Of a stretch of DNA of 64,000 bases, positions 11,501 to 57,685 are shown one piece after another. The DNA is from Macrostomum lignano. Its lineage: Eukaryota. The stretch covers positions 158,676 through 222,675 of the forward strand of contig NIVC01001911.1 in NCBI GenBank assembly GCA_002269645.1, read 5' to 3'. Position 1 is the first letter of the stretch; each line of letters opens with the position of its first letter. Both the position numbers and the translations under genes were made by a program. Under the pieces are notes generated by a model. The model was not told the DNA's origin, did no database searches, and was given only the letters and a program-made list of their open reading frames with translations.

Positions 11501-12790
11501 GAGTCCATCGCTTGGCATGCGGCCGCGGCTTAGATGCCTTGGCTGCCCAAAACGAGATTGGAGGAGTTGGACCGGGCCCAGCATGAAGCCCTGAGACTTT
11601 TTACCGGTCTGCTGAAGTCAACTCCCTGTGAGGCCGTCTATAAGGAAGCAAATTGCGACCCCACTAGTGTCGAGGCTAAACGGAAAGCCCTCATCGCCGT
11701 TGAAAAGGCCAAAAGAAGACCGGCCAGCGACCCTTCGCGCCAGATCTGTGAGCGCGAAGCCGACGTCCGTCTCAAAGCCAACGAGGACTCCTGGAGCAAG
11801 CTAATATAATTCTAATTAACCTCCTCCCGTTCGAGAGACTGTTGAACTCATGGGGATTCGCGCGCCTCCCTGGGAAGCGCTCAACGGCCAGGAGCGTCTT
11901 CGCCTCTTCCCTAATCTCTTCAGTCCCTGCAGCAAGTACGATGACATCCAGGTCAGGCGCGACCTCTTTGAGAAGACCTGCAGAGTGCGCCTTCCTGACA
12001 CTTGCTATAATACTGATGGATCGGCCACCGGCGGCACCCAGCTTGGCGGAGCGGCCTGGATACTGTACTGTAGCAGCCAGGACCTGATCATCCGTTCAGG
12101 GCGTGCAACGGCCGGCAGATGGTTCAGCTCCTTTAAGGCCGAGCTCCGCGCCCTCTCCCTGGCGCTGGACGACATCTTGATAGAGGGACCGCCGAATGCC
12201 GCTATCCTGACCGACAGCCAGGCCGCCATACGAGCTATCCAAGCCGACTCTACCACCACCAACAGCCTGCTCGAGGAGCCCAAAGACCTCATTCGACGCG
12301 CTATCCGGGTCACAGACATCACCATCCAGTGGATACCGGGGCACGTGGGCGTCGATGGAAATGAGCTGGCCGACCGGGAGGCCAAGCGGGCCGCGAGCCT
12401 GCCGCAGCAGCACATCCCGCTGGCGCTCGCTGCCGCCAAGAACTTGCTGCGCATGTCCGTCCCGTACCATGCAGCCCGCCCTGAAGGGTCACCTGGGGGA
12501 AGTCTACTCTGGGCGCCTTACCTTCCACGACGGCCCAAGTAATCAGAAGGTCCTCGTCTCGCAGGCCGTCGGCTTACTATAAAAAGCGTATCGGGATGAC
12601 CGACGAGGCCACCTGCAGGCTCTGCAGGACGAGGTGGACCAATTTCACCTACTGACATGTCCCGCCTAGGATTCGACACGCCGCTTGTTTGGAGTTCATA
12701 ACCTTAGCGACCTTGCCGATGGTCACTTGGTGGCGCGGCTCCTGGGTGCCCTCGATTGGGTCCCCATCTGATGGAGCCGCACTCCGCAAT
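8551..12790 (+). mobile_element. Near full-length degenerate non-LTR retrotransposon, I-group/Ingi-like: 2A peptide, 2 PHD-like fingers, APE endonuclease, RT, RNase H
   Basis: DVESNPGP (8783-8806); APE motifs LLQWNADGI, IQESK, GDLN, SDHKPI; RT motifs FRPVSLTS..VKLIER, QAGF, LDYSRAFDRV, SPILFLLYIND, FAND; RNase H motifs TDGS, ELRA, TDSQ, WIPGHVGVDGNELAD; broken by frameshifts and stops. Confidence 0.92.
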
Positions 12791-13806: not shown

Positions 13807-14643
13807 CAGGGGTGTCACCACCGAGGAGGGGGGGTTAGGAGGGACGCATGTCCCTCCAGTGAAACCTATGGCCCAGACGGGGACGTACAATGCTTTGTGG
13901 AAATCAATAATTATTTCTTCAGAGCGTTAAAATACAAGGCCTGCAGCGCTAAATTGAGTGCCTGCGACGCTAAAATGAGCGCATGCTTGCGACACCAAAA
14001 TGAATGCCGTGCGGCACCAAAATGAATGCCGTGCGGCACCAAAATGAATGCCGTGCGGCACCAAAATGAATACCGTGCGCCACGTGCGGCGCCAAAACGA
14101 GTGCCTGTGGCACCAAAAAGAGTGCCTGCGGCGCCAAAATGAATGCATGCTTGCGGCGCCAAAAAGAATGCCTGCGGCGCCAAAGAGTGCCTTCGGCGCC
14201 AAAAAGAATGCCTGAGGCGCCAAAATGAGTGCATGCTTGCGGCGCCAAAATGAATGCCTGCGGCGCCAAAATGAGTGCATGCTTGCGGCGCCAAAATGAG
14301 TGCATGCTTGCGGCGCCAAAATGAGTGCATGCTTGCGGCGCCAAAATGAGTGCATGCTTGCGGCGCCAAAATGAGTGCATGCTTGCGGCGCCAAAATGAG
14401 TGCATGCTTGCGGCGCCAAAATGAGTGCATGCTTGCGGCGCCAAAATGAGTGCATGCTTGCGGCGCCAAAAAGAATGCTTGCGGCGCCAAAGAGTGCCTG
14501 CGGTGCCATGAGTACCTGCGGCGCCCAAATTAGCGCTAACAACACACTGATTCTCTAAATAATGTACATGTAGGAATTCAGTCATCAAAGTTGTGGCTTT
14601 GTCCCCTCCCCTCCCCCACCAAAAAACCATGGCGACGCCCCTG
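13807..14643. mobile_element. Non-autonomous hAT-like element containing a 22-25-bp minisatellite (GCTTGCGGCGCCAAAATGAGTGCAT)
   Basis: TIRs CAGGGGTGTCACCA / TGGCGACGCCCCTG (12/14 match); 8-bp flanks CTCGTATT and CATGTATT (6/8 match); array at about 13940-14530. Confidence 0.7.
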
Positions 14644-14937
14644 CATGTATTTGACTATCAAAATACTATCTACGCGTTCGCATGTACAACGTACAGTTAT
14701 ATTTTTTTATCGTGCATGAATGACGTCTCGCAACTCTTTTTGGTGCCGGAATGCAAATTAAGTCTATTATATTTACATGCACGCTTGTCTCAAGCCACAA
14801 TTCAGTGCAGAGATACACAAATTAATGTATAAAAACTTGGACGACATGTTATTAGGTAAAGTGGCTCGCTTGATGAAGAGTAGATAAATAAAGGTAAATA
14901 TCAACATGAAGTTAGTTATTTATTTATTTGAGTTGCT

Positions 14938-14973
14938 GATGCATTTCGTCCATTTGCATTAGGACATCGTCAG
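14938..14973 (-). ncRNA. Minimal hammerhead ribozyme core in the PLE 3' repeat (sense to the ORF)
   Basis: CUGACGA-U-GUCC-loop-GGAC-GAAA-UGCA-UC; palindromic AUGCAU stem III; stem I weak. Confidence 0.65.
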
Positions 14974-17046
14974 GGTCTTTTTATTTAAGAAACAATTTGA
15001 ACGAATATTCAGTATATATAGATAGTTGAGAGTAACAAGAGTAGTTGAATTGAGTTTTTAATTGATGGTTTAAAACTTGTACATAGTAATCAATTTTTTG
15101 ATACAGTATTGGTTGGGTAAAGTGCATATATCAGTTTCAAGCCAGTCCGGTCATTGACAAATCAGCTAAAAAATTCTGAGTTGACGGCTAGCCCCACCCA
15201 TCGCAAGTTGGTTATTTAACGTGGGCTGTTTGGTCTTAATGTACAGGGCTTCTAATAGTCAGAGCATGTGATCTCTATTACAAAAATCAATAGCCTTTAT
15301 CATTTCGTGTGGTTTAGCCTCACAACAGGAATTGCAGGTTAGCAGGTGTTCGTTAATAGCAGAGTTTTTTAGCCAGTGCTCTCTGACCCTCGTGTACAAG
15401 TGTCGTTTAGTTTTTCCTATGTAGGAGATGCTCTGGTCCTCAGAGCAAACAAATTTATACACGACACCAGCCGCGAGAGGACGTGGAACACTGGATTTCA
15501 ACTTGCAGACGAACTTAGCAATCTTTTCGGTGCGAAACACAACATGGATTTGAGTGTTTAAGTCTTTACGTAGCAGCTTTTCTAACTTCTTTTTAAACTC
15601 TATAGAACAAACATCAAAATAAAACAAAGTGATCAAGGGACATTCAGAGGTGGAATCACGAACTTTCATCCGAGTAGGTTCAGTCAGTTTGTCATTGAGA
15701 AAAGAGTTGACAATTTTCATCACAAAGTTCTTAGGATAGCCATTGTAGCTGAGCAGATTGGTGAGGATTTCAACTTCGTTGTGGAAAAGTCTCCAAGAGC
15801 TGCAAGTGGAAAAAGCCCAGTGAAGAAAGCCACGAATCAATCCAGTTTTCCATTGTCTAGGGCACAAGGCGTCAAACCTAAGCAAAAGCCCGGTAAAGCT
15901 AGGTTTCCTATACACGCTGGTCGAAATAGTTTCATCGGTGGCGTCAACGTCAATGTCTAAGAAAGGAAGTCTTCTGCCTCCCCCCTCCACCGTGAATTTG
16001 ATATTCTCATGAGTAGAATTGATTAACTTAAAAAACTCGTCCTTCTTAGCTTCGTCCTCAAAGATCGCAAACGTGTCATCGACGTAGCGTTTGTAGAAGT
16101 GAGGCGCACAAGGGAGGGCCATCCAGTCCTTTTCCCAGTGAGCCATGCATAAATTAGCGAGGGTTGGGGCGAGAGGGCTGCCCATGGCACACCCATCAAT
16201 CTGTCTGTAATATTTTTCCCGAAAAAGAAAGATGCCGGAGGTGGCGAATTTGAGCATCTTCTTAAAAGAGGCTTTAGAGAAAGGAGGTGGATTGGCTTTT
16301 TCATACACAAGATCAGCAGCCAGCTCAATGGTGAATTCGAGAAGGATGTTGGTGAACAGAGAAACAACATCAAAGCTATATAAAGCCTGTCAGTTTGATT
16401 AATCGTGGTATTGCTGAGGCTCTCAATAAACTGTTTATTGGATCCCACACAGTGCTCAGAAGGAATAACAGGTTTAATTAAATTGTCAAGGAATTTGGCT
16501 AGCTCATACTCCGAAGTGTTGATCATCGAAACAATTGGTCTTAAAGGATGACCATCCTTATGAACTTTGCACAGACCATACAGTTGTCCAGGTTGGCTAC
16601 CACTTGGGACAATCACCTTAAAGATCTCAGGGCTCACATGCGGCTTGACATAAGTTCTCAAAAAAATCTGAAGAGATCTTTCATTTTTCAGAATCGGGTG
16701 CGTCATAGTGACTTTATCGGCGGTACCAAGGCATTGAAACTTGAGTTTGTCCTGGACCACTTTCTCAAGTTTCTCAAAATAATCATTACTGTCTAAGACA
16801 GCAACGCCATAGCCTTTATCGTAACCAAGGATCTTGATATTGTCATTGTTCTTGAGACCGTTCATAGTCTGGTGCATAAGCCTATTGCTTTTCTTGTTAA
16901 CGTATCCTTGAGCTCTACAGATAAACTTGATTACTATGTACAAGTTTTAAACCATCAATTAAAAACTCAATTCAACTACTCTTGTTACTCTCAACTATCT
17001 ATATATACTGAATATTCGTTCAAATTTTTTCTTAAATAAAAAGACC

Positions 17047-17082
17047 CTGACGATGTCCTAATTAAAATGGACGAAATGCATC
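17047..17082 (+). ncRNA. Second minimal hammerhead core in the inverted PLE repeat
   Basis: CUGACGAUGUCCUAAUUAAAAUGGACGAAAUGCAUC followed by GG, giving only 2 bp of stem I. Confidence 0.65.
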
Positions 17083-18001
17083 GGCAACTCAAATAAATAA
17101 ATAACTAACTTCATGTTGATATGTTATTAGTCTTTTTCTATCTTATCTGAAGTGGAGGGAGCTGTGTGCGAAGGTTGGAAGGGTTAAAGCTACTCCGATC
17201 AGTTTTCTTGCATCTTTTATTTCAGAGTCCAAGAGAAATTGTTCACTGGCGTATAGAGTGGCGACTTTTTAATGTTGCTGAGTATAGCTAGTTGCTGAGT
17301 ATAGCTAGTTGCTGAGTATAACACTAGTTCTCTATTTTTAAACACAGCTCTCACCCCGCGAGCAAGAATTTTTCAAACTGAGGATTAAGTCATTATTTTA
17401 GTTCCGCGTTGGTTTGGTCTGCCCTACTAGTATTGGACGGCAAGGAAATGTGTACTTCTTAAATCTGGAAATATAGCTGTGCATGTGGGTGCACATTTGG
17501 TGTACATGTGTGCATTAGTGTCATAGGAGATGTACTTGCATGACAGGGGTGAGTCAAATTTCTTGGAAAAAAGCGAATGAGAGCGCCAAGTCTGCTTTTT
17601 AAGTCTGCTATCGATAAAATACATTTGAGGCAACACACTCGGTTTCCAATCCACAAAAATTCGGTGCAATCGCTAACCTATACTGCCTAGTGCAGCGAAG
17701 CTTACAACTTTTCGATCCAAAATTTGATTTTTTGACCAAAAACTGAGTGGATTCGTTCATCTCTGAAGCTACGGAAGGAATTGCATGTAAGTTAAACAAA
17801 ATACTAGTAAACCTGTCACAGTATATGCATACTATACCATCTTATAGATAACTGCTCGTCTGTATCAAGTATTATATTTTCTCATCAATTAGTCAAAAAA
17901 CTAGTGAAACCACCTTAGAATATGCACACGTACTGACGATACAGGGAAAACTGAAAATGCAGGACTCTATACACTAGTTTCCATAAGTTAGATAAAATCT
18001 A

Positions 18002-18420
18002 CTCAATCAATTTATAAGAATGATTGCATGCACTACAGAGACTACTGATGAAATTGAGTTCAGTAGTTGATTGTCGCGCTGTCGCGAGTTGTAAAATTTT
18101 TCAAATCAGCTTCTTTGGCCCACATAAGTGGTTAATGAGTGAAGGGTGGCCCATCTTGTGTATCTATGACATTTTTTGTAAGTGCGAGTATAAGCATCCT
18201 TCCATTGTACTTCAGCTGTCCATGATATTGACTCGACTCGAACTAGATCAAAGATCATATCAAGGAGTTCTATAATTTGCAATGCTAATTATAGAACTCC
18301 TTGCATCATGCATATATACACAAGATGGGCCACTCATTTACAGCGCTAAAATCTACTACTGAACTCAATTTCGTCAGTAGGCTCTGCAGTGCATGCAACC
18401 ATTCTTATAGTTTGATTGAG
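18002..18420. mobile_element. Palindromic MITE with TA target duplication (Tc1/mariner-like)
   Basis: TA|CTCAATCAA...TTGATTGAG|TA; outer arms about 65 bp inverted, plus further inverted blocks (TGGCCCATCTTGTGTAT pair; 17-bp stem hairpin at about 18261-18303). Confidence 0.7.
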
Positions 18421-18770
18421 TATCCTATTTAATTCGTTTAATAATTATAGCGTCTTATTTCCCTTAATCTACTGAACTCAAAATTTAAGCAACCCATAGA
18501 TGTCGGCTTTTTTTCGCACACGTGACGAAAAACCTAGGCCTATCTATGGAATACAGGATCCATTCTCTAGATCATCCAACAGTTTAGAAGACGAAGGAAC
18601 TATTAGTATAATACTAATTTAGTGCAAAATTGTAAAATTCCTTTCTGCCTACTATTAGTACGCTCGTAGTAAAAATAAAGCGTTTTTTTATTCTATATTT
18701 TTAACTCTTTGCTAATGCATTGAAATAATGCATTTGCATTTCTAAATAAAACCATATTTTAAACATTTAA

Positions 18771-18960
18771 GACACTTAACTCTGCATTGCTTCAGTTCAC
18801 CCAGCTGTAAAATGGATGCCAGCATTAGCTGGGATAATTGAGGGTATGTGTGGCGACCCCCAGTCCTTGGACTGAACAGCCGTACGCAGCCTTCAATAGC
18901 GGCGGCTGAGCTGTCGGTTGCACATCTGCCCATTGGACAGGTGTAATCAATTATTATAAT
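18771..18960 (+). mobile_element. 5'-truncated SINE fragment with a CORE-like central domain
   Basis: GACACTTAACTCTGCATTGCTTCAGTTCACCCAGCTGTAAAATGG resembles the CORE consensus (CACTT.AC...TGCCTCAGT..CC..CTGTAAAATGG) from memory; AT-rich tail. Confidence 0.45.
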
Positions 18961-18980
18961 AATTTAAACATTGCAGTATA

Positions 18981-21900
18981 ATGCAGCGTCCGAGGGGCGC
19001 CGCCTCAGGAGTGCGACGACAAGCCACCAGCAGTCCACAGGAACTCTTCAGCGTGCAGATTACTGGCCTGCCACCCGGCGTGTCCAGTCAGAGTCTAGTC
19101 GATCGGTTCCAGCAGTCTGCAGGTCAGTTCGTGATTCCTCCCGAGCCCAAGCAGCGAGACAAGACTGCCTGGTGCGCTTATCTAAATGGACTCACAGAAA
19201 ACCAGGCTGAAACCTTTCAGGAAAGATGGAATAATAAAATATTTCCCGGCGGACAACATTCTATAAGATGCAAAACAAGCTCGTCAAAATTGAAGGGAAG
19301 TGAAAATATTCAAGGCAAGGCCACCCAACCGCAGCCCATGATTTACAACGTGGAATTATCCGGACTTCCGCCAAATGCATCGAACAAGTTTCTGGCCGCG
19401 ACATTCAAGCAGAGCGCCGAAAAATTTGAGGTGCTCCCAGAACCGAAGCAGCGTGACAAGACTGCCTGGTGCGCTTATTTAAATGACGTTCCCGAGTCTG
19501 AGGCACACAGATTTATACAAAAATACGATAATTTCAAGATAGGCAATAACAAGTTTGTAGTGAGGTGTAAGCTCATTTTCAAAGCTGACCGTCGGACTAC
19601 TGAAGATCGTTCTAGAGTGCGATCTAGAGTGCATGGTGACTCGCTACGCCAGCAAACTGAGAAGCTCGGCGCCGAGGCCTCAAGCTCGCAGTCTTCCGTG
19701 AGCACTACCCATAGTGAGACTACCAATCAGGATAAAGGCATTTTGTGCAAGTACAATATTCTGGGCACATGTAAATTTGACAATGACTGTAAGCACATTC
19801 ATATGTCTTGTCCAATGGAAGAGGATTGCGACGATGATGAGTGTTGCCTGGGTCACCCTGCGAACGTTAAAACGCAGATTGGTCGTAGCGTGGGTCGCAG
19901 ACTGGTATTGTGCAATCTCTTTCGATTCGGAGCTTGTCGATACGAATCAGAATGCCGCTTCAAACACTTAGACTGTCCGTTAGCAGAATTATGCGAGGAT
20001 TCCTGCTGCTTTTTTGGGCACCCGCAGGGCTGGGGAAGCGATTTCTCTGATCCAAACGAATGCTCTGTGGATTGCGACCAGTACGACTGCACGAAGAGCC
20101 ACCCAGTTGGTCGCACAAAGCGCTGTCAATTCGGCGATAAGTGCACCAAATTTGAGTGCAGCTTCCTGCACTCCGAGAAGCGTCAGGCTTGCGAATCTGC
20201 CGGCGACTGTCAGGATTTCGACTGTTCAAAGTTGCACCCGGAATCTCGTGAGGAGCCTTGTGTGAAAGGAGCCAAGTGCCTGGAATTTCATTGCCAAAAA
20301 CTGCACCCAGCTTCTAGAGAGCTATGCGACAAGGGAAAGCTGTGCACTGAATATGCGTGCGATAAACTGCACGAAGCTGGCAGACGTAAAAAATGCAAGT
20401 GGAGAGATCGTTGCAAGCTGCCCTTTTGTCCATGGCTTCATCCAATAAACCGGAGCAAACAATTTTGCGACCGGGGCGATTCGTGCGACGACTTCGACTG
20501 CGCATTGGTGCATCCGCCTGGTCGATGCAGTCCCTGCAAGTATGGAGAACGGTGTTGGAATCACATTTGCGAATGCCTACACCCCGAGGCTTGGAACCCT
20601 TGTCCCAACGGTCTGGGCTGTCGCGATGTCACTTGCGATTGCTCGCACTCTCCGAGACGCCCCAAACCGTGTACGCAGGGGAGCGACTGCAGGAACAGAG
20701 ATTGTGCAGGTTTACACCCAGGTATGAGTAGCGTTTCGAACGCGCCTCTTCAGAGAAGCTCAGCGCTTAAATCGGATCACCAGCGAAGAATTGACAGAGA
20801 AGCGAACCGCTTGCCAGTACTGAACTATCGAGAACAGTTCCTTGAACGGCTTCAAACTGAAAAAGTTCTGATTGTAAGGGCAGAGACAGGAAGTGGAAAG
20901 ACCACCCAGCTGCCGCAGTACGCAGCAGAGTGCTTCGGAGGCCTTGTTATCTGCACACAGCCTCGCGTGATGGCGGCGGTCTCGATTGCGCATCGAGTGG
21001 CCCAAGAATTTGACGGATGCGATGTCGGAGAGTCAGTCGGGTACAAAGTCGGTGGCGAGAACAGTGCACCAGGCTCTGGCATAATGTTCATGACAGAGTC
21101 GTGTCTCATTCGGTATTGCCAAAGCAATGAATCATTGGACAATGTGTCAGTGCTAATCGTCGATGAAGCTCACGAGCGATCGCTGAATGTTGACATTGTT
21201 CTTGGACTTGCCAAGCTCATTCGCATCAAGAGACCTGACAATTTCTATGTTGTGATAGCATCGGCCACGATCGATCCACAGTTGTTTCGAGATTTCTTCA
21301 ACTGCGGCGTCCTTGACATTCCAGGAAGAATGTACGATGTCTCACTGCAGTACATTCCTCCGGCTTTTGATTCAAACCCGGATGTGTTTATCAAAAGTCA
21401 TCTGGTGCCAAGTCTGATTAAAGCGCTGCGAGACCACAGCGACGGTTATGCGCTCGTCTTTCTGCCCGGAGAGCGAGAAATCCAGCAGGCCATCAAGGCG
21501 TTTCAGCAGCAGCAGACGGAAGACAACTGCGTGGCGCTGCCTCTGTACGGGTCTCTTCCTCGGGAGGAACAGGTCAAGGTTCTGGACTTCAAGCCGAGTC
21601 AAGACTCCGATCGCTTGGTGGTGTTCTGCACTAATGTTGCTGAGACGTCACTGACAATTAACGGAGTCAGGTTGGTGGTCGACTCCGGTCTGGCGAAGGA
21701 GTCACGCTTTGACGCAAAGAGGCGCATCACAGTGTTGGAGCTGCGGCAGATTTCGCAGTCAGCCGCCAACCAGAGAAAGGGTCGAGCGGGACGAACTGCA
21801 CCAGGTCACTGTGTTCGGCTGTACTCTGAGGACGTTTTAAAGAGCGCTGAGTTTGTTCCCGAAATTCTGCGGTCCTCGTTGGATCTGGTCGTTCTGCTGT

Positions 21901-24900
21901 TGATCAAACTAAAGTTAAAGCCGCTCGAGTTTTCATTTCTGGACAAGCCAAATGAAGAAATGCTGATTCACTCGTACCAAACTTTGATGGATCTTGGATG
22001 CCTGTCCGGAGTTGAGTCGCTGTCAAATGCAGGTGAACTGTTTGCAGAACTCGGGCTCGATCCACGTTTGAGTGCTTTCATAGTCAGGGCTCATGAGCAC
22101 TTCGGTCAGTTAGAATTGGCGGTTACGGTTGCCTGCATCCTGACAGCCCCTGGTAGTATATTCTTCCTTGGACGCGACAAGGAGAAGAAAGAGGGACTGC
22201 AGAAAAGAGCATTAGAAGCATTTTCTCACGAAAGCGACATTCTCTACGAAGTCAGTGTCTTTGATTCGTGGTCTAACGCCGGAAAATTGATTAATGGGAA
22301 GTGCAAAAACTGCGGAAAAGTGGCTAGAAATTTTCAGAACAGCTGTAGATCATGCCGGGTTGGACACAGCAACTCAAACAGGCTCAATAACAAGGTCATG
22401 GAGCACATAGAGAAGACGCGAACCTCTTTTTTGAAGACTATAAAGAAAAGCAAATGGTTCTTAGAGCTTCAAAAGGTTGAGAGCAGCTGTGAAGACACAA
22501 TCCAAGTTGTTGGAAGCTGTCTCGAGCAGGTGATTCCAGAACAGGTGACATGTCTGTTGGTAAAGCGTCTGCCGTCAGAGGGCATAAAGATTGTTGACTC
22601 AAATATCCGAGCTAGAATTTCGAACACATCGGTGTTTGCACAACGCCCCCAGGACTGTGAGTACTTCGTTGCAGTACGAGTTAGGCAGATGGTGTCCGGT
22701 ATGTACATCGTGGATGGGTTGCACCCACTCAAAGATCCAACGACTGTGTCTGATAGAAGGTCGCATCCTTTAGAAAAGATATTTACGGAGGCCAATGCGA
22801 GCTCGAACTTGTTAAAGGCAGTCAATTCGAAAATCAAGGATGAATCGTCACAGATCTCGGAAGAACAACGAAGGTGGATTGTACTGTCGCACAATGCGGA
22901 TGAAGCAAGCATCGATGTCTACGCAAGAGCTTCGGAAAGTTCCGAACTTCGTTCCAAGCTGAAGTCTTTAATTGACAAATCAAAACTGACGTATTTACAA
23001 GAACAGCATATGCTTGAAACGAAGGGTTTCAGAGCAACATTTCAAGGTGGCCTTCAAGTAAAAGAGGTGCATATTTGTACTTTGAATCGTACTGATAGCG
23101 AAGTGTCATCATCGAATAACGAAGGTGCCACAGACTCAGCTGAAAGTGACAACGGACTGGCTCAACTTCTGGTATCCGCTCCCTGCGGCTTTGAAGAGGA
23201 AACTATTCGAGCACACAGTGACTCGACTGCAAAGATCCATCACACTAATCAGCGCAGACGGCGTCAGGAAAAGTTTAAAGTCTTCATTTCGAATATGCCA
23301 GCAAACTGGAAAGAATCTGATGTGCAAGATCTCATTAGGAAATCAGAATGTTTGAACGCTGTAGTCCCGATTCGCATTTTCCCACCTGCTCAGCCGGGAA
23401 TCGGGACTTCGAGAGCGCTTTTAACACTAAACAGTGAAACAGAGCGCGACAGTCTGATTAAATCTTTGAGCACAGTTTTGTGCAACATCGGACCGTTTCC
23501 TATTAGTCTCATTAGTAAGAAAAACGGCGGAACCTTCGTTAAACAGGTTTCACCTGAAATAAAGCCTTGCGAAGATAAAACTCCATCTATTCCAGAACTA
23601 TTTTTTGTTAAGTTTAACGAATCAAAGCATGCAGTCGAATTTTACAACAAGATCCGTGCAGGTTCAATTGTTGGATGCTCTGCAGAATGGACTGAATCTG
23701 TTTTCATCAGCCATCCTGACCTTTTTCCGGACCTAAACAGCCTCATTGAGCAGTCTGGCGATCCCACTGTAAAGAGTACGAGCGTTCCGAAGCCTGACAA
23801 AACGTTAGAAATCCGACTGTCCGGTCCGCAGCAGGACAAGATAAAATTGGTAGCGAACAAGCTCCGAAGTCTGTTCTCCCCAATAACTATTCGGCACGTA
23901 TCCAACAAAGAGAAAACACTTTTCTACGAAATCAAGAAGACTGGTCTGTTCGATGCCTGGGCCAAGGAACTCAATTTGGTGTGCGAATTCCGAGACGATT
24001 GAACTTCCGGGTATTTGGCTCAAAAGTAAGCCAAGGCTCTCTCATGCGAAAAATTGCTGACGAGTTCACGAAACTCGAGAGCCGCTATCGCCTGATACCC
24101 CTGAATGCTGCAACTACCCAGTTGTTCCGAAATGGACTCGCCGGAGACTCAAAATTGAAGGCGCTGCAACGGAAATGGGACCAACGTTGCTTCATCAAGT
24201 TTCTGTTCCACACCTCGGAGATTGAGCTATTTGCTAGAAAAGATTCTTCGGTTCTTTCAGATTGCGAAAAAGAGGTGAACGATCTCGTTGCTGAACTCGG
24301 AAGCAAAAATATACTTGGCCAAAAGACGTGCGTTGTCTGCAGATCTAAGTCAGCAGTCGAAAATTTCTTCATATACGGACACCCGTACTGCAAGTGCATT
24401 GACAACTGGCTACAAAGCGTCTCTGCAGCCTCAATCTGTTGTCCGAAATGCAGACACCAATTACGATAAGAGAAATTCGCAAACTCACCGGCGACAACTT
24501 TGAAAAGCTTGCAGTACGTCAAGTTGCTCATTATGTGGCTCAGGATCCTTCAATGAAAATTGCTAGATGCATCATTAAAGACTGCAATGGATTCGTTAAT
24601 AAAGGCTCGTACGAAAGTTGCGCTTGCTGTAAACACTGGGTGTGTGTTGACTGCAAGGTTGCAGACGATGTAATGCATAGAGGTTTGAGCTGCTCAGAGT
24701 TCAAAAAAGCATCTACAGATAAGGAATCGGTTTCTCGGCTGATTAAAGCAGCAGAAGTCTATGTCAGACAGAACTGGCCTGCCGACATGCCACCGATCCG
24801 TGCGATCGACGTCAACCCTGGACTGCTTAGCAATCCTCCAAGTCCGCGTACAAAACTTTTCACCGCGGCTTGTTGTCACTGAATCGGGGCACATTGCACG

Positions 24901-25763
24901 AGTCCGACGGTATCTTCGCCTTTCACGGAAGCAGCAGTGAGGCACTGAGACAAATCTGCCACTCGGGATTCGATCCTAAAAGGAGGTCGGGCCAAGCTTA
25001 CGGCCCGGGAGAGTATTTCGGAGTGACTCCCAGCATCTCTGGAGGTTACTCGAGAACTGCGGCGCGATGATCGTCGCTTTTCTCTTGAACGGAGGTCCGA
25101 TTACACACAGACAAGGCTTTTGCTATGTGGTTAAAACCCAACAGACGGCTCAAAGTCTTTTAATTTGCCTGTCTTAGTGGTGTACTTTGACTCATCAACT
25201 CCTCGATTGGACTTCATTAAGCCAGTAGCCAACCAGTCTCAAATATCCAATCATTTGAAAACGACAACTGGCGATCTCCGTTTCGGTGGCACTGGCAGAA
25301 AGATGGCGGCGGATTTGAACCCTACACGGATGAATTTAATCGCTTGCTTGAATCGCAATACGATGCGTACAGAATGCACAGCGGACCGGCGCAGTTCACC
25401 ACACCGCCTATTAGGCGTTACATAGACGACACTCCGCAACCGTACACTGTGAACTTCTCGGCTAACACACAGAGGAACGTGAAAACTGGTTACGTTCGGT
25501 CCATCCAACGCCAACAAGTGGACATCAACGTCAGCGTCAGCACTACTTGGCAGTACCAAAACGAGAACGGCATCTGGCAGCCATTTGAAAGCTTAGTACA
25601 GCGTCAAATTCAGCAGGCATATGTAGCCTACACGAGTGGCTCTGGCAGCTGCAAAGCGAGAGTCCAGTTTCCAGGGCGGCCGGAAACCTACGAGCTGGAC
25701 TTCCTTCAAGGCCAGCAGACCAACTTGCAGAGCGGAACAAAGCGTCCCATTAGAAAAAACTGA
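18981..25763 (+). CDS. Giant intronless multidomain protein (about 2,260 codons after frameshift correction): 2 RRM-like, 14 CCCH-type Zn fingers, DEAH-box helicase, RING-like + IBR, PARP-like ADP-ribosyltransferase, 2 WWE
   Basis: 1673-aa clean ORF with ETGSGKT (about 20883), DEAH (21162), SAT (21261) and QRKGRAGR (21771); continues through -1 shifts into C..C/GH..C/CP.C (24329-24449), IBR (24568-24693), FHGS..GEYFG..CYVV..LPVLVVYF (24921-25190) and two WWE-like units ending at TGA 25763. Confidence 0.85.
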
Positions 25764-26918
25764 CGTTTAATCGTTGAGACTGTAAGTTTTGTGAGTGGTC
25801 AGTTGATTTTAACCGATTTTAATTGCAATCAACCGTGGTGGAGGCGGCAAATTTGTCTTTTGTCGGGTTTTGCTGCACGTGATATTTAATATTTATTCTA
25901 TCATTTTAAGACTGATTATTTATATTATACGGCAGTTCATCTTTTCCCCGTTTTTTCATCAAAACGAGATTTGCAAGTTAAACATCTTTAGACATTTAGA
26001 TCTTTAGACTATAGACAATTTAGACATTTAGACAAATTTCGTTATTCCATTTTAAACACCATTGACAGTTTATATTTAAATGTTTCCATTTAAAGTCTAA
26101 TTTGAATTGAGTTTTGCCTTACTTTTAGCTACATATATAGTCAATCGATTGTGAAACAATGAACTGTCTAAATTGTACTGCCGTTATGGCTGAATTCGAT
26201 GTTTGGCTCGTCTGAATAGGACTGGAAAGGTGTAATAATTAATATATCAACAACACATCCGCTCTATGATTTTCACGTACAAAACGAAGAAAGATAGATA
26301 CTTGTAGCTTTCTCTATGGTCCGCGCATCAATGTATTGATTTTATTGCCGCACGGCATTGACAAACAAATTTGCTCTTCAACAATGCTTCTTTTACCATA
26401 GAAGCGTCCGGCAACGCCCAATTAACATTTGCTGCGAAAAATTTCGTCAATGATGTCGACTTGTACGGCTTTCGTGCAGCAACGACCATAGATCATGTCT
26501 AAATCGTGTCTATAGGTTGTGTCTAGCTCGCTGCTGCACTCAAAAGCCGCGTGCGTCATCTCTACAAGCTCGTGCATTGACGCACTGGCAGACAAACAAT
26601 ATGCACTTGTAACTAGAGCACGATTGGGAGTGCAGCAACAACGCTTAAATTACTATATAGCTATGATGTATATGTATCATTCTATCATCGGCTTCTCATA
26701 ATATTATGCACGTACATAATTAAATTAGATATACTGGTATACAGACCTACTATCTGTAACAGTATTTCTCTTATTTAAGCTGAGCGTCTTCCAGTTCAAC
26801 TCGTCGCTGAGACACGAGCAAACGTCAGCTTTGGTCTCTAGGGACGCTGACGTGAACAATTTTTTTACATGCACCTCATGGTCTATCTGATTCGCTGGAC
26901 TCATTTTTATCTTGTTTT

Positions 26919-30304: not shown

Positions 30305-30595
30305 TTAGCACTCAACGCCGAACTTGTCAAAGTTGCGCAGAATAACGCTGAGCTCCAGGTGCACCTTGCCGCCGGCGGTCGAGTGCACATTGCGTCGGTC
30401 GTGCAACTCGTAGACGAGGTCGGGTCGTTTCAATTGGATTCCGCCGCCGACAAACTTTGAGCTGACCTCATCCATGAACGAGCCGGTTGGGCGCCAAGTG
30501 ACGCAGTCGATTTTGTGCAGGCCGGGCTGCGACGGCACGTGAGCGAAGCCGTAGCCAACCAATGAGCTGCGCCCGGCCCAGTCGTAGTGGAACAC
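30305..30595 (-). CDS. B9D2: B9 domain-containing protein 2 (MKS transition-zone complex), exon 2
   Basis: VFHYDWAGR..VGYGFAHVPSQPG..WRP.GS..FVGGG..VHLEL.VILRNFDKFGVEC*; cag acceptor; total 175 aa with exon 1. Confidence 0.95.
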   Translation of the reverse strand: MFHYDWAGRSSLVGYGFAHVPSQPGLHKIDCVTWRPTGSFMDEVSSKFVGGGIQLKRPDLVYELHDRRNVHSTAGGKVHLELSVILRNFDKFGVEC

Positions 30596-30669
30596 CTGCG
30601 ATTTTTTAAAATAGATATCGGGTCCGTTCTGTATAAGACGTTTAAATGATATGGCATGTATGGCTAAAG

Positions 30670-30995
30670 CCCCTTGGTGCTGGCGCCCCTGGTGCTGGCG
30701 CCCCTGGTGCTGGCGCCCCTGGTGCTGGCGCCCCTGGTGCTGGCGCCCCTGGTGCTGGCGCCCCTGGTGCTGGCGCCCCTGGTGCTGGCGCCCCTGGTGC
30801 TGGCGCCCCTGGTGCTGGCGCCCCTGGTGCTGGCGCCCCTGGTGCTAAAGCCCCTGGTGCTGGCGCCCCTGGTGCTAAAGCCTCTGTTGCTAAAAGCCCC
30901 TGGTGCTATAGTCTCTGTTGCTAAAAGCCCCTGGTGCTATAGTCTCTGTTGCTAAAAGCCCCTGGTGCTAAAAGACCCTGGTGCTAAAGTCCCTG
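30670..30995. repeat. 15-bp minisatellite (GGTGCTGGCGCCCCT)n in the B9D2 intron
   Basis: Direct reading; degenerates at the right end. Confidence 0.95.
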
Positions 30996-31136
30996 GTCCC
31001 CTCAAGCAGCACAATTCTGCCCATTCCGAAGACTCGCCGTGAGCTAGTACAGTAGTATTCGAATACATCATCATGCACACACGTGGAGGCACGCACTCAT
31101 ACACACGCTCACACAGGATGTACAGCGGTCCTGGCT

Positions 31137-31905
31137 TTCTAATTGTCAGGCATGTACACAGTCTCTCTAATTGTCAGGCATTACACAGTCTCTCTAATTG
31201 TCAGGCATTACACAGTCTCTCTAATTGTCAGGCATGTACACAGTCTCTCTAATTGTCAGGCATTACACAGTCTCTCTAATTGTCAGGCATGTACACAGTC
31301 TCTCTAATTGTCAGGCATGTACACAGTCTTTCTAATTGTCAGGCATTACACAGTCTCTCTAATTGTCAGGCATGTACGCAGTCTCTCTAATTGTCAGGCA
31401 TTACACAGTCTCTCTAATTGTCAGGCATGTACACAGTCTCTCTAATTGTCAGGCATGTACACAGTCTCTCTAATTGTCAGGCATTACACAGTCTCTCTAA
31501 TTGTCAGGCATTACACAGTCTCTCTAATTGTCAGGCATTACACAGTCTCTCTAATTGTCAGGCATTACACAGTCTCTAATTGTCAGGCATTACACAGTCT
31601 CTCTAATTGTCAGGCATTACACAGTCTCTCTAATTGTCAGGCATGTACACAGTCTCTCTAATTGTCAGGCATTACACAGTCTCTAATTGTCAGGCATTAC
31701 ACAGTCTCTCTAATTGTCAGGCATTACACAGTCTCTCTAATTGTCAGGCATGTACACAGTCTCTCTAATTGTCAGGCATGTACACAGTCTCTCTAATTGT
31801 CAGGCGTGTACACAGTCTTTCTAATTGTCAGGCATGTACACAGTCTTTCTAATTGTCAGGCATGTACACAGTCTTTCTAATTGTCAGGCGTGTACACAGT
31901 CTCTC
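31137..31905. repeat. 27/28-bp minisatellite (CTCTCTAATTGTCAGGCAT[G]TACACAGT)n in the B9D2 intron
   Basis: Direct reading. Confidence 0.95.
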
Positions 31906-32066
31906 TGTGTTTTCGGGGGCTCGCCGTCATGAGCGTAAATCGCACGACAATTCCCCAGCAAAGTTTTGTGCTTACAAACCCCAATGAATGTGTGTGTCCA
32001 CGCACGGACTCGAACCATGAGGTGTTGTGGCGCGAGAGAGTCAGATGGTTTTACCGCTGAGCAAAA
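31906..32066 (-). mobile_element. tRNA-derived SINE head and body (Pol III A and B boxes) running into the 27/28-bp array
   Basis: A-box-like TTGCTCAGCGG (32064-32054) and B-box GGTTCGAGTCC (32016-32006), 37 nt apart; I could not fold an intact cloverleaf. Confidence 0.55.
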
Positions 32067-32182
32067 TTTGGATAAAATATCTGATTTAGCCGCTTGCTCT
32101 GAGCTGCTATAGGGGGTTTTGAGTTGCGGCCCTCACAGTGTCAGTGAAAGAGAAAGAGAAACATTGAAAGAGAAATTCTTGC

Positions 32183-32419
32183 CTCAAAATGCAGCTTAGG
32201 CCAGCCCTGCAGTCCGCGAGTAGCGAAATGCAAATCGATGGGATGAGCGAAGTAGGCCATTTCGCCCGAGGCTGGGCAGTCCACCTGAGTCTGGCCGCTC
32301 ACTTCGCCCTCAAGACGTTTCCATGCGGGACCGAAGTGGGCCTCCCACTTGCAGAAGAGATCATTTTCCGGGAACTCGCTGGCACCAACAATCTGCCCGA
32401 TCACGTGAACTTCCGCCAT
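32183..32419 (-). CDS. B9D2: B9D2 exon 1
   Basis: [46 protein letters not shown]; donor is GAG|GCAAGA (GC-AG intron). Confidence 0.95.
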
Positions 32420-41655: not shown

Positions 41656-42220
41656 TGGAGAGGCAGTTAAAATTGTAAAGCAATTAAAATGATTGCTTTC
41701 CAACTGATTGTGTTGGAAATTTTTATTTTCCAATATTATTCATTATTCATTTGCAAAATTTCTCAATAATTTTATATGGCCAACAATAAAACTCAGTTGT
41801 ATTGGTCAGCCGGATATTCTCGTGTATCTGTATAGAGAAAAGAGACCAAGCAGATTTAGGTCCCTGAGGCACATAGATTGCTATATTGATTTGGGAAGTG
41901 AAGGATCAGGGAGGCTGGTCAACTTAAAGGGGGAATGGTCACGCACACGCAACATCATCTGTCACTTAGCCCCCACCCAGCCCCACAGTCCCTTCATCTC
42001 TAAGTCCTTCCCCTCATAACCGCCACTCATATTTTAATTCTAGAAAAATATTCCCAACAAAGCTGACAGAGTGAAGAAGAGAAGAGACTGATGAGTCCTG
42101 CTTCTTCTAGGGAAGAGGTTGCTTGGGTCTTTCGCTATAGTCTGTCTCTCGGGTCTCTTCCTGCCTTCTTCTCATCATCTTTCACTTTATCTGGCTGAAT
42201 TATATTGCTAGCTTGTGTCA

Positions 42221-42762
42221 GCTAGTGTCTGCCTGTGTCAGCTAGTGTCTGCCTGTGTTAGCTAGTGTCTGCCTGTGTTAGCTAGTGTCTGCCTGTGTTA
42301 GCTAGTGTCTGCCTGTGTTAGCTAGTGTCTGCCTGTGTCAGCTAGTGTCTGCCTGTGTTAGCTAGTGTCTGCCTGTGTTAGCTAGTGTCTGCCTGTGTCA
42401 GCTAGTGTCTGCCTGTGTCAGCTAGTGTCTGCCTGTGTTAGCTAGTGTCTGCCTGTGTTAGCTAGTGTCTGCCTGTGTTAGCTAGTGTCTGCCTGTGTCA
42501 GCTAGTGTCTGCCTGTGTTAGCTAGTGTCTGCCTGTGTTAGCTAGTGTCTGCCTGTGTCAGCTAGTGTCTGCCTGTGTCAGCTAGTGTCTGCCTGTGTTA
42601 GCTAGTGTCTGCCTGTGTTAGCTAGTGTCTGCCTGTGTTAGCTAGTGTCTGCCTGTGTTAGCTAGTGTCTGCCTGTGTTAGCTAGTGTCTGCCTGTGTTA
42701 GCTAGTGTCTGCCTGTGTTAGCTAGTGTCTGCCTGTGTTAGCTAGTGTCTGCCTGTGTTAGC
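42221..42762. repeat. 20-bp minisatellite (GCTAGTGTCTGCCTGTGT[T/C]A)n, left part, about 27 units
   Basis: Direct reading. Confidence 0.97.
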
Positions 42763-45569: not shown

Positions 45570-45812
45570 GTGTCTGCCTGTGTTAGCTAGTGTCTGCCTG
45601 TGTTAGCTAGTGTCTGCCTGTGTTAGCTAGTGTCTGCCTGTGTTAGCTAGTGTCTGCCTGTGTCAGCTAGTGTCTGCCTGTGTTAGCTAGTGTCTGCCTG
45701 TGTTAGCTAGTGTCTGCCTGTGTTAGCTAGTGTCTGCCTGTGTTAGCTAGTGTCTGCCTGTGTTAGCTAGTGTCTGCCTGTGTCAGCTAGTGTCTGCCTG
45801 TGTCAGCTAGTG
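45570..45812. repeat. Right part of the same 20-bp minisatellite, about 12 units
   Basis: Direct reading. Confidence 0.97.
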
Positions 45813-46334
45813 TTCTTTTCTGTACCGCAGTCAGTGCCATTTTGATATTTATTTACCAATCTTAGAATTCAAACTTATCGGAAATCAGACAAAACTACTT
45901 TAAGTAAACTATCTAGCTTTTAGTAGTGCAAGGGGAAATTTTGTTATCAAGCAAAAAGTTGAGAATAAAATATAGAAAATTGTTACCAAGGTGCACCCAA
46001 TCGACCCCTGCTCAAGTCCAAAGCAGAAATTTTATAATAACGAAGTGGGTTAGGGAGGCACTGCTCACTAACTGCTCCATGAATGTATGTATCCGTGCTG
46101 GTTGGGCAGTGAATAAACCTGGATGCAATTTTCTCTGGGAAACTTAATAATTTCTTGGAATTGAGGCAGCAAAGAGGCACTGATTTTTTGCTACTTATTT
46201 AGAGAAAATTGCTACAGATCAAGATTCCAGGGGAGCCAATCTTGAGGGCTTCGAGTCAGGATTAAATGTGTGGGATTGTACTTTTCGATATCGGTTCATG
46301 TACTAAGTTTTCTTGGTAAAATTATGTTTCCAGT

Positions 46335-49809: not shown

Positions 49810-51048
<1,239 letters not shown>

Positions 51049-57164: not shown

Positions 57165-57258
<94 letters not shown>

Positions 57259-57609: not shown

Positions 57610-57685
<76 letters not shown>

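What the first reader, a model, noticed from the sequence alone, without database searches (positions are those of the whole stretch)
18981..25763. Single-chain candidate antiviral machine: RRM x2, CCCH x14, DEAH helicase, RING/IBR, PARP-like ART, WWE x2
Seen: one intronless frame, once the -1 shifts are bridged, strings together RNA-binding modules, a complete DEAH helicase core, Cys/His RING-like and IBR motifs, an ART-like HG..YF segment and two WWE-like domains. Known: CCCH+WWE+PARP is the ZAP/PARP12/13 architecture; WWE binds ADP-ribose and couples ADP-ribosylation to ubiquitination (RNF146, DTX); DEAH helicase+RBR fusions occur in plants (DEAH11/12 type). Inference: one polypeptide could sense and unwind foreign RNA, ADP-ribosylate a target, read that mark and recruit an E2. 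I do not recognise this complete combination from any characterised protein.
Basis: partly seen in the sequence, partly recalled or inferred. Interest (0 to 1): 0.9.

Follow-up and report, generated by a model that had tools for sequence, protein, structure and literature searches.

The report
Flatworm RNA helicase–RING–PARP–WWE giant gene
This flatworm (Macrostomum lignano) gene encodes a giant single-chain protein that joins RNA-binding modules and an RNA helicase to ubiquitin-ligase-like, ADP-ribosyltransferase and ADP-ribose-reading domains; it belongs to an old, widespread but apparently undescribed eukaryotic protein family, so the architecture is real, though not unique to this locus.

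Summary
Window 18981-25763 (+) is a Macrostomum lignano gene (assembly Mlig_3_7). It carries 2 RRM-like modules, 14 CCCH fingers, a complete DEAH helicase core, a DEAH11-like RRM/KH region, RING1, IBR, a PARP10/12-like ART domain and two WWE domains.

In the window the reading frame is broken by six single-base gaps. There are no stops and no larger indels. A 99.5% identical sister copy on another contig reads through the whole tail in one frame, and at least 17 relatives carry helicase plus RING/IBR-PARP-WWE in one predicted protein. They come from bdelloid rotifers, oomycetes, a chrysophyte, Archamoebae, metamonads and a diplonemid; Paulinella has the same order without a detected RING/IBR. 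The one-polypeptide reading is therefore supported, and the gaps look more like long-read assembly errors than decay.

The nearest known family is the DEAH11/12-type helicase-RBR ligases. Here the catalytic RING2 is absent and ART-WWE-WWE takes its place.

The antiviral role is an analogy only and was not tested. I found no paper describing this architecture. My reading is a new variant of known kinds (helicase-RBR and PARP), already present but mis-annotated in public proteomes. Interest is moderate to high.

The parts
18981..25763 (+). Whole gene, about 2,260 codons with no intron. In this window the frame is broken by six single-base gaps relative to the sister copy; there are no nonsense changes and no larger indels.
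   Evidence: ORF list and translation. DNA alignment to sister locus L001. Same contig record as GCA_002269645.1 NIVC01001911.1.
19044..19277 (+). RRM-like module 1
   Evidence: Pfam RRM_1 E 4e-4, 20.5 bits against a cut-off of 20.7. Internal repeat with module 2. Beta-alpha-beta-beta-alpha-beta order in a low-confidence model, with tandem-RRM Foldseek matches.
19338..19589 (+). RRM-like module 2, an internal duplicate of module 1
   Evidence: Local alignment of the two modules scores 200. Model and Foldseek.
19746..20717 (+). Array of 14 CCCH zinc fingers, mostly CX5CX4CX3H
   Evidence: Regex count with shuffle control. Pfam zf-CCCH E 3e-3. The array is conserved in relatives.
20832..21797 (+). 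DEAH/RHA helicase core (both RecA-like domains): GSGKT, TQPR, DEAH, SAT, TNVAETSLT, QRKGRAGR
   Evidence: Pfam DEAD 4e-10 and Helicase_C 2e-12. Motif scan.
21798..22742 (+). Helicase C-terminal extension (winged-helix / ratchet / OB-like), aligned to the DEAH11-like family
   Evidence: hhalign of the family against DEAH11-like proteins, probability 100%, E 1e-40, high column confidence in this stretch. No direct Pfam HA2 or OB hit in the window protein.
22743..23978 (+). Middle region collinear with the RBD/RRM and KH domains of DEAH11-like proteins
   Evidence: hhalign alignment continues through this region, with good confidence over the RRM-like and terminal KH-like stretches and poor confidence between them.
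24329..24450 (+). RING1 (C3HC4)
   Evidence: Seven of the eight ligands are invariant and the eighth (C138) nearly so across ten diverged family members. Family profile against HOIP and HOIL-1 RING1-IBR, 5e-9 and 1e-7. Coordinates mapped from L001.
24568..24693 (+). IBR (C6HC). No RING2/Rcat follows it.
   Evidence: Pfam IBR 3e-4 on the window piece. Ligands invariant, and no conserved Cys or His between the IBR and the ART domain. HOIP RING2 is not aligned.
24709..25203 (+). PARP-like ADP-ribosyltransferase domain (H...Y... with no acidic third residue; mono-ART type)
   Evidence: Pfam PARP 2e-8. Invariant H, G, Y, S, Y. Family profile against PARP12, PARP10, PARP15 and ZAP. Foldseek of a rotifer relative's model against PARP10/12/14/15 over the whole catalytic fragment.
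25278..25517 (+). WWE domain 1
   Evidence: Pfam WWE, two stretches, in the sister copy (1e-24) and in the window piece. Profile against the DTX1 tandem WWE, 1e-13.
25542..25760 (+). WWE domain 2, followed directly by the stop codon
   Evidence: Pfam WWE 2e-21 on the window piece. TRIP12 and DTX1 WWE matches.

Best explanation
Window 18981-25763 is one of several near-identical copies, in the neopolyploid Macrostomum lignano genome, of a cellular gene for a protein of about 2,260 residues. The protein belongs to an ancient eukaryotic family that branches next to the DEAH11/12-type helicase-RBR ubiquitin ligases.

Shown:
- Domain order is (RRM x2, specific to this lineage) - CCCH array - DEAH helicase with its WH/ratchet/OB extension - RRM/KH region - RING1 - IBR - PARP10/12-like ART - WWE - WWE.
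- RING2, the catalytic domain of RBR ligases, is missing, and ART-WWE-WWE sits in its place.
- The zinc ligands, the ART H and Y, and the WWE signature residues are invariant across supergroup-level divergence.
- The tail is under purifying selection between Macrostomum copies.

Inferred:
- The six single-base gaps that break the frame in this window are more likely residual long-read assembly errors in a duplicated region than real mutations.
- Mechanism: the CCCH, RRM and KH modules and the helicase bind and translocate on RNA. The ART domain binds NAD+ and mono-ADP-ribosylates a nearby target (the protein itself, an RNA-bound protein, or possibly a nucleic-acid end). The tandem WWE reads ADP-ribose. 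RING1-IBR brings in an E2~ubiquitin.
- RNA recognition would thus be converted into a combined ADP-ribose/ubiquitin mark. This is the logic seen split across ZAP/PARP12, RNF146 and DTX3L-PARP9 in vertebrates.
- The biological setting (RNA surveillance, or defence against viruses and transposons) is a guess by analogy.
For: - Identity and copies. The window and sister copy lie on two contigs of GCA_002269645.1, each with a B9-C2 gene downstream.
- Single chain: the sister copy has an unbroken 1026-codon ORF across the junction and the tail. A third copy's tail is unbroken over 597 codons. At least 17 clusters in other taxa carry helicase, RING/IBR, PARP and WWE in one protein, and others lack one of the tail domains, with names.
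- Selection: dN/dS 0.21 between the two intact tails.
- Nature of the breaks: all seven differences in length between the two copies are one base long, six of them a base missing in the window. No nonsense codon occurs in either copy. The window lineage has only 7 tail substitutions (3 synonymous, 4 not), fewer than the intact sister's 15. The assembly is PacBio/Canu polished with Pilon, 64% error-free bases by REAPR, with 180 Mb of duplicated blocks at 95% identity or more (PMC5730564).
- Relationship to DEAH11-like proteins.
- Domain assignments.
- DELTEX-type ubiquitylation of ADP-ribose and of nucleic acids, as the precedent for coupling a RING to an ADP-ribose/NAD+ pocket: PMC7615817, PMC11467253.
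Against: - Neither assembled copy has a complete uninterrupted ORF (six breaks here, one in the sister).
- Five of the six gaps lie in the last 1.8 kb and the sixth just before it. That stretch also has about 4.6 times the substitution density of the rest of the gene. This could mean the tail of this copy is really decaying.
- No transcript or peptide evidence was available.
- Without RING2 there is no known way for an RBR-type RING1-IBR to transfer ubiquitin, so the ubiquitin step is speculative.
- The residue at the catalytic-Glu position of the ART domain could not be fixed. The sequence suggests Cys or Phe in 'GFCYV', so activity is unproven.
- dN/dS of 0.2 and deep conservation fit a housekeeping RNA-metabolism role as well as a defence role.
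Confidence: 0.6

Rival explanations
1. The window copy is a partly decayed paralogue. It makes, at most, a 1673-residue RRM-CCCH-helicase-RRM/KH protein without the RING-IBR-ART-WWE tail. The six single-base deletions are real.
For: - Five of the six gaps lie within the last 1.8 kb and the sixth just before it. That stretch shows 1.2% substitutions against 0.26% in the rest of the gene.
- The genome is redundant (neopolyploid, 180 Mb duplicated), so loss of one copy's tail would be tolerated.
- The public annotation stops the model at 1673 residues.
Against: - All length differences are single-base and nearly all go the same way, which is the signature of long-read consensus error. Real decay gives mixed lengths and some nonsense codons; none is seen.
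- Most of the extra tail substitutions belong to the intact sister lineage, not to the window lineage (15 against 7).
- The sister copy has a single-base break of its own elsewhere, which suggests a general error process.
Confidence: 0.25
2. Two separate genes: a helicase gene ending near 24002, and an independent downstream RING-IBR-PARP-WWE gene.
For: - Some database entries are tail-only proteins of 526-544 residues, for example in Rotaria socialis.
- The annotation of this assembly calls nothing downstream of the helicase model.
Against: - The sister copy reads through the junction without a stop.
- At least 17 relatives across five supergroups have helicase and tail in one protein, in the same order.
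- There is no spacer. The DNA of the two copies is collinear base for base apart from single-base gaps.
- Most tail-only entries come from short contigs and are likely fragments.
Confidence: 0.05
3. The gene reached Macrostomum (and bdelloid rotifers) by horizontal transfer from a protist rather than by descent. This concerns its origin, not its function, and is compatible with the best explanation.
For: - Among named animals, only bdelloid rotifers and Macrostomum carry it.
- The ORF of about 6.8 kb has no intron.
- Bdelloids are known for taking up foreign genes (PMC3417536).
Against: - Macrostomum and rotifer sequences form one clade (72% NJ bootstrap) whose next named neighbours are Amoebozoa. 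That is what vertical descent within Amorphea with many losses would give.
- The related helicase-RBR subfamily is already reported to have been lost repeatedly in animal lineages (PMC2904391).
- The tree is a simple NJ tree with weak deep support.
Confidence: 0.25

Closest known systems
DEAH11/DEAH12-type helicase-RBR ubiquitin ligases (the 'Helicase / Plant I' RBR subfamily of Marin; Pfam KH_DEAH11, RBD_DEAH11, RRM_DEAH11)
   Same: - Closest helicase relatives outside the family itself (about 300 bits; 42 of the top 150 hits).
- Same order: DEAH core, WH/ratchet/OB, RRM/RBD, KH, RING1, IBR.
- Collinear profile alignment over 665 columns.
   Different: - RING2/Rcat, which carries the catalytic cysteine of RBR ligases, is absent.
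- A PARP-like ART domain and two WWE domains follow the IBR instead.
- A long CCCH array precedes the helicase.
ZAP (PARP13) / PARP12 / PARP7 / PARP11: CCCH-WWE-PARP proteins
   Same: - Same domain vocabulary: CCCH RNA-binding fingers, WWE, and a PARP catalytic fold of the mono-ART (H-Y-nonacidic) type.
- PARP12 and ZAP are among the best sequence and structure matches for the ART and WWE parts.
   Different: - Different order: here ART precedes the WWE pair, whereas in ZAP/PARP12 the WWE domains precede the C-terminal PARP domain.
- Different finger spacing: mostly CX5CX4CX3H here.
- A full DEAH helicase, RRM/KH domains and RING1-IBR are inserted.
- The helicase body is related to DEAH11-like proteins, not to PARP12 or ZAP.
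DELTEX E3 ligases and the DTX3L-PARP9 pair
   Same: - Tandem WWE (DTX1 is the best PDB match, 1e-13), together with a RING next to a domain that binds NAD+/ADP-ribose.
- DELTEX RING-DTC ubiquitylates ADP-ribose and nucleic acids (PMC7615817, PMC11467253). DTX3L works with a PARP partner.
   Different: - No DTC domain was found (no Pfam hit).
- The RING is of the RBR RING1 type, with an IBR.
- The NAD+-binding module is a PARP fold in the same chain.
- The WWE pair is C-terminal rather than N-terminal.
RNF146 (Iduna): a WWE-RING, poly(ADP-ribose)-dependent E3
   Different: A small protein with one WWE domain and a canonical RING. It has no helicase, ART or IBR. The resemblance is one of logic only.
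ZNFX1: an immune RNA helicase that is also an E3 ligase
   Same: A giant RNA helicase with zinc-finger ubiquitin-ligase activity in innate immunity (bioRxiv 10.1101/2025.10.14.682297, abstract seen).
   Different: It is an SF1 helicase, not DEAH/SF2, and has no PARP or WWE. It is unrelated in sequence and serves as a functional analogy only.

Membership tests
DEAH/RHA (SF2) RNA helicases | Motifs I (GxGKT), Ia (TQPRR), II (DEAH), III (SAT), V and VI (QRxGRAGR) | tested here: met
   All six are found intact in the window ORF. Pfam DEAD 4e-10 and Helicase_C 2e-12.
DEAH/RHA (SF2) RNA helicases | C-terminal winged-helix, ratchet (HA2) and OB-fold extension | tested here: inconclusive
   No Pfam HA2 or OB hit in the window protein. 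The region does align with high confidence to the corresponding part of DEAH11-like proteins, which do have Pfam HA2_N, HA2_C and OB_NTP_bind hits.
DEAH11/12-type helicase-RBR ligases | DEAH helicase followed by RBD/RRM and KH_DEAH11 domains | tested here: met
   Profile-profile alignment, probability 100%, E 1e-40, 665 columns, reaching the terminal KH-like stretch. There is no direct Pfam hit to KH_DEAH11 in the window protein.
DEAH11/12-type helicase-RBR ligases | RING1 and IBR | tested here: met
   Zinc ligands conserved in ten members, with one RING1 ligand nearly invariant. Match to HOIP and HOIL-1 RING1-IBR at 5e-9 and 1e-7. Pfam IBR 3e-4 on the window piece.
DEAH11/12-type helicase-RBR ligases | RING2 (Rcat) with the catalytic cysteine after the IBR | tested here: not met
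   There are no conserved Cys or His columns between the last IBR ligand and the ART domain. HOIP RING2 does not align (score -5). DEAH11-like proteins do show a second IBR/IBR_1 hit there.
PARP (ARTD) family | PARP catalytic fold | tested here: met
   Pfam PARP 2e-8 on the window piece, above the cut-off. The model of a rotifer family member matches the PARP10, 12, 14 and 15 catalytic fragments over their whole length, E 6e-7, TM(target) 0.55-0.58.
PARP (ARTD) family | NAD+-binding His and Tyr of the H-Y-E/H-Y-x triad | tested here: met
   H317/G318 and Y347 are invariant in alignment A1. The same 'FHGSS' and 'GEYFG' strings are present in the window piece.
PARP (ARTD) family | Catalytic Glu (needed for poly-ADP-ribose chain elongation) | tested here: not met
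   The strand that should carry it reads GFCYV(V/I)NNP in nearly all members, with no acidic residue. This is as in mono-ARTs such as PARP10 and PARP12. The exact equivalent residue was not fixed by a residue-level structural superposition.
PARP (ARTD) family | ADP-ribosyltransferase activity | not testable with these tools
   There is no biochemical evidence. This is an inference from the conserved pocket residues.
ZAP / PARP12-type CCCH-WWE-PARP proteins | N-terminal CCCH fingers, then WWE, then a C-terminal PARP domain, in that order | tested here: not met
   The order here is CCCH - helicase - RRM/KH - RING1 - IBR - PARP - WWE - WWE. The helicase body groups with DEAH11-like proteins.
DELTEX E3 ligases | Tandem WWE plus RING plus a DTC domain | tested here: not met
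   Tandem WWE is present, with DTX1 the best match, and a RING is present. No DTC-domain hit appears in Pfam scans of the window pieces, the sister tail or the relatives.
WWE domain (ADP-ribose/iso-ADP-ribose reader) | WWE fold with conserved W...W...E and the Q-x-N/T-x(n)-R pocket residues | tested here: met
   Pfam WWE 2e-21 (window) and 1e-24 (sister), two stretches each. Conserved W, Y, E, Q, N/T and R columns. TRIP12 WWE TM(target) 0.80. Ligand binding itself was not testable.

The most novel reading that the evidence does not exclude
In this family the PARP-like domain has functionally replaced RING2. RING1-IBR would hold an E2~ubiquitin next to NAD+ or ADP-ribose bound in the ART pocket. 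The nearly invariant cysteines in 'IC..GFDP' and 'GFCYV' are candidates for a role in this.

On that reading, the enzyme would write a joint ADP-ribose-ubiquitin mark on RNA ends or on RNA-bound proteins that the helicase and the CCCH array have selected. That would be DELTEX-like chemistry evolved independently, built into an RNA-sensing helicase, and dating back to early eukaryotes. It would represent an ancient one-chain RNA surveillance or immune effector.
Probability: 0.12. Interest if true: 0.85.

Novelty: new variant of a known kind. Interest (0 to 1): 0.6.

Why it matters
Crosstalk between ADP-ribosylation and ubiquitin (RNF146, DELTEX/DTX3L-PARP9, ubiquitylated ADP-ribose, ubiquitylated nucleic acids) is an active field. 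So far it rests on a few vertebrate proteins that act as separate partners.

A conserved pan-eukaryotic family that puts an RNA helicase, RNA-binding arrays, an E2-binding RING1-IBR, a mono-ART domain and a tandem ADP-ribose reader in one chain would offer three things:
- a natural 'fused pathway' that says which activities belong together;
- a case where the catalytic RING2 of an RBR ligase was swapped for an ART domain;
- a candidate ancient RNA-directed surveillance or defence protein in protists and a few invertebrates.

On the practical side, the family is mis-annotated in public proteomes as 'DHX15/PRP43', 'HrpA-like' or a truncated 'RNA helicase'. The two Macrostomum gene models both miss the entire effector tail.

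Tried and rejected
- Word-indexed homology searches with the big ORF and with the sister copy's tail found almost nothing. The family only appeared in the exhaustive search.
- Exact-sequence look-up of the Rotaria socialis tail protein found no contig.
- phmmer of the N-terminus against PDB sequences gave no RRM hit. The RRM call rests on a marginal Pfam score plus a low-confidence model.
- Introns as the cause of the frame changes are rejected. The sister copy reads through the same DNA, and the two copies differ there only by single bases.
- The two-gene reading is rejected (see rival explanations).
- A mobile-element or viral origin for the gene is rejected. The retroelement fragments nearby are separate ORFs on other coordinates. 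The gene has cellular relatives in many eukaryotes and the same downstream neighbour in both loci.
- Membership of the ZAP/PARP12 family and of the DELTEX family is rejected on domain order and on the missing DTC domain.
- Literature searches for the gene identifier, for Macrostomum plus PARP, and for helicase plus RBR/IBR plus PARP plus WWE found no description of this architecture. The main survey of PARP evolution does not mention a helicase fusion. Subscription journals are largely outside the library, so absence is not proven.
All comparisons used the window pieces and the relatives as they stand.


Full report
**What the sequence is.** The window is Macrostomum lignano DNA. The 1673-codon ORF at 18981-24002 is on record, identical, in assembly GCA_002269645.1 (Mlig_3_7), contig NIVC01001911.1. 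Its first 1224 residues are 99% identical to BOX15_Mlig016460g2 on contig NIVC01000353.1. The surroundings are typical of this genome. There are many tandem arrays and retroelement fragments. A B9-C2 domain gene lies downstream on the minus strand in both loci.

**Checking the observation.** I scanned the window pieces as they stand and joined nothing.
- Above Pfam's own cut-offs: DEAD (4e-10), Helicase_C (2e-12), PARP (2e-8) and WWE (2e-21, two stretches).
- Just below cut-off: IBR (3e-4), RRM_1 (4e-4) and zf-CCCH (3e-3).
- Weak: RING (0.06).

The sub-threshold calls are supported by other evidence.
- The CCCH region holds 14 units, 11 of them strict CX5CX4CX3H. Shuffles give a mean of 1.8 and 0.03.
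- All six diagnostic DEAH/RHA motifs are intact.
- The two N-terminal modules are an internal duplication.
- A single-sequence model of the N-terminus has low confidence (pLDDT 53). Even so, it gives beta-alpha-beta-beta-alpha-beta twice, and all 50 best Foldseek matches are tandem-RRM structures.

The inventory in the finding is therefore correct, with one amendment. The zinc-finger part is RING1 plus IBR without a second RING.

**Is it one chain?** The sister locus L001 aligns to window 13929-26306 at 97.5%. Over the 6.8 kb coding span the two copies differ by 34 substitutions and seven single-base length differences. In six of these the window lacks a base, and in one the sister does. Neither copy has a nonsense codon in the other's frame, and there are no longer indels.

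The sister copy has an unbroken 1026-codon ORF. It starts in the post-helicase region, crosses the point where the window ORF stops, and runs through RING, IBR, PARP and both WWE domains to the same stop codon. The tail of a third copy, 92% identical, lies 7.7 kb upstream of the sister copy and is also unbroken over 597 codons. Between those two intact tails dN/dS is 0.21 at dS 0.10, so the tail is a constrained coding sequence.

**Are the breaks real?** All of them are single-base, and six of seven go the same way. About half sit in short homopolymer runs by a crude test.

Five lie in the last 1.8 kb and the sixth just before it. That stretch also has a higher substitution density, 1.2% against 0.26%. 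I polarised the tail substitutions with the third copy as outgroup. Only 7 fall on the window lineage (3 synonymous, 4 not), against 15 on the intact sister lineage. Six one-base deletions beside seven substitutions, with no nonsense codon, is not what gene decay usually looks like.

The assembly was built from PacBio reads with Canu and polished with Pilon. REAPR rated 64% of bases error-free, and 180 Mb of the assembly lies in duplicated blocks at 95% identity or more, where short-read polishing is least reliable (PMC5730564). I therefore put about two to one on assembly error over true decay of this copy. Read-level data would settle it.

**The family.** An exhaustive profile-free search with the helicase plus its extension, followed by local phmmer with each segment, showed that at least 17 clusters at 50% identity carry helicase, middle region, RING/IBR, PARP and WWE in the same order in one predicted protein. 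Others lack a detected WWE or RING/IBR. Many also carry the CCCH array.

Named members are:
- bdelloid rotifers (Adineta vaga UJR18854.1, A. ricciae CAF1446543.1, Rotaria, Didymodactylos);
- oomycetes (Lagenidium, Aphanomyces);
- the chrysophyte Pedospumella;
- Paulinella (no RING/IBR detected in the representative);
- Archamoebae (Pelomyxa, two genes, and Mastigamoeba, which shows no detected PARP match);
- metamonads (Chilomastix, Carpediemonas);
- the diplonemid Namystynia.

Their source names are 'RNA helicase', 'HrpA-like', 'DHX15/PRP43' or 'hypothetical'.

In an alignment of ten tails at 31-38% identity, the following are invariant (one RING1 ligand is nearly invariant):
- the RING1 ligands;
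- the eight IBR ligands;
- the ART His-Gly, the Tyr of GEYF, and Ser and Tyr;
- the WWE signature residues.

No conserved Cys or His lies between the IBR and the ART domain.

A simple NJ tree gives the following:
- Macrostomum groups with the rotifers (72%).
- An unnamed environmental sequence joins next (88%).
- Archamoebae join after that (50%).
- DEAH11-like proteins are the outgroup.

The N-terminal RRM pair is not found outside Macrostomum, apart from one weak hit.

**Relation to known families.** After the family itself, the best helicase matches (about 300 bits; 42 of the 150 listed) are proteins with Pfam KH_DEAH11, KH_DEAH11_2nd, RBD_DEAH11/RRM, OB_NTP_bind, HA2, RING, IBR and a second IBR. 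This is the DEAH11/12 'Helicase' subfamily of RBR ligases. That subfamily is described as ancient and as repeatedly lost in animal lineages (PMC2904391).

A profile-profile alignment of the post-helicase region of the family against these proteins has probability 100% and E 1e-40, and is collinear over 665 columns.

The family tail profile matches:
- HOIP and HOIL-1 over RING1-IBR only (5e-9, 1e-7);
- PARP12, PARP10, PARP15, ZAP and PARP14 over the ART core;
- DTX1, TRIP12, PARP11, HUWE1 and ZAP over the WWE domains.

An AlphaFold model of the Rotaria socialis tail (pLDDT 76.5) matches the whole PARP10, PARP12, PARP14 and PARP15 catalytic fragments (E about 1e-6, TM(target) 0.55-0.58). It also matches TRIP12, DTX1 and ZAP WWE structures.

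The strand that should carry the catalytic Glu reads GFCYV(V/I)NNP, with no acidic residue. The domain is therefore of the mono-ART type.

**How it most likely works.** Shown: the parts, their order, and their conservation. The rest is inferred from what these domain families are known to do.
- The CCCH array, the RRM and KH modules and the DEAH motor select and remodel RNA.
- The ART domain binds NAD+ and mono-ADP-ribosylates something nearby.
- The tandem WWE binds ADP-ribose.
- RING1-IBR docks an E2~ubiquitin.

Without RING2 the usual RBR thioester relay is impossible, so the ubiquitin step is the weakest link. The best precedent for a RING acting next to an NAD+/ADP-ribose pocket is DELTEX RING-DTC, which ubiquitylates ADP-ribose and nucleic acids (PMC7615817, PMC11467253).

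Whether the setting is antiviral, anti-transposon or general RNA quality control cannot be decided from sequence. Deep conservation and purifying selection fit any of these.

**Novelty.** Every domain is known, and the nearest family (helicase-RBR) is known. The combination, with ART-WWE-WWE in place of RING2, is present in public proteomes. I did not find it described in nine literature searches or in the main PARP-evolution survey. I rate it a new variant of known kinds. The finding is real and moderately to highly interesting.

Noticed in passing
window 15259-16943 (-): Penelope-like retroelement remnant. Reverse transcriptase (RVT_1) and a GIY-YIG nuclease domain lie in two overlapping ORFs in different frames, so there is at least one frame break. 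A matching element sits upstream of the sister copy in L001.
   Followed up: partly
window 10133-12542 (+): ORF fragments with RVT_1 and RNase H / RVT_3 hits, in a GC-rich stretch (0.56). This looks like a non-LTR-type retroelement fragment. The region is not shared with the sister locus.
   Followed up: partly
window 42742-45454 (-): LTR-retrotransposon pol fragment (RT_RNaseH_2 4e-35, RT_RNaseH, end of RVT_1), flanked by arrays of the same 20-bp tandem repeat at 42214-42762 and 45569-45813.
   Followed up: partly
window, many places (e.g. 1696-3940, 36193-38622, 46339-48006, 49810-51051, 56590-58448): Very dense tandem-repeat arrays: 23-bp x 93, 23-bp x 110, 11-bp x 150, (ATCT)n x 310, CT-rich. 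They produce the long spurious ORFs and the extreme GC/AT skews in the composition profile.
   Followed up: no
L001 1-2329: The tail (RING-IBR-PARP-WWE x2, unbroken over 597 codons) of a further copy of the gene lies 7.7 kb upstream of the sister copy. It is 92% identical to the window tail, so the family is tandemly duplicated at that locus. The window has no such copy upstream.
   Followed up: partly
window about 30305-32419 (-); L001 21991-23733 (-): A B9-C2 domain gene (ciliary transition-zone type) is the downstream neighbour in both loci, which shows the two loci are syntenic duplicates. A 28-bp tandem array (31138-31906) lies inside its span.
   Followed up: no
relatives P0017, P0023-P0026, P0176: Protist members extend 350-450 residues beyond the second WWE domain, with a region that has no Pfam match. 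P0176 shows a 'GGFVRDW...NDIDT' string there. The Macrostomum protein stops right after WWE2.
   Followed up: partly
relatives P0030 (Mastigamoeba), P0055 (Pelomyxa), P0049: These members carry four to five tandem IBR-like repeats between RING1 and the ART domain instead of one.
   Followed up: no
public annotation of GCA_002269645.1: Both Macrostomum gene models (1673 and 1263 residues) end at a single-base break and omit the effector tail. No protein covering the tail of this species is in the protein collections searched.
   Followed up: yes
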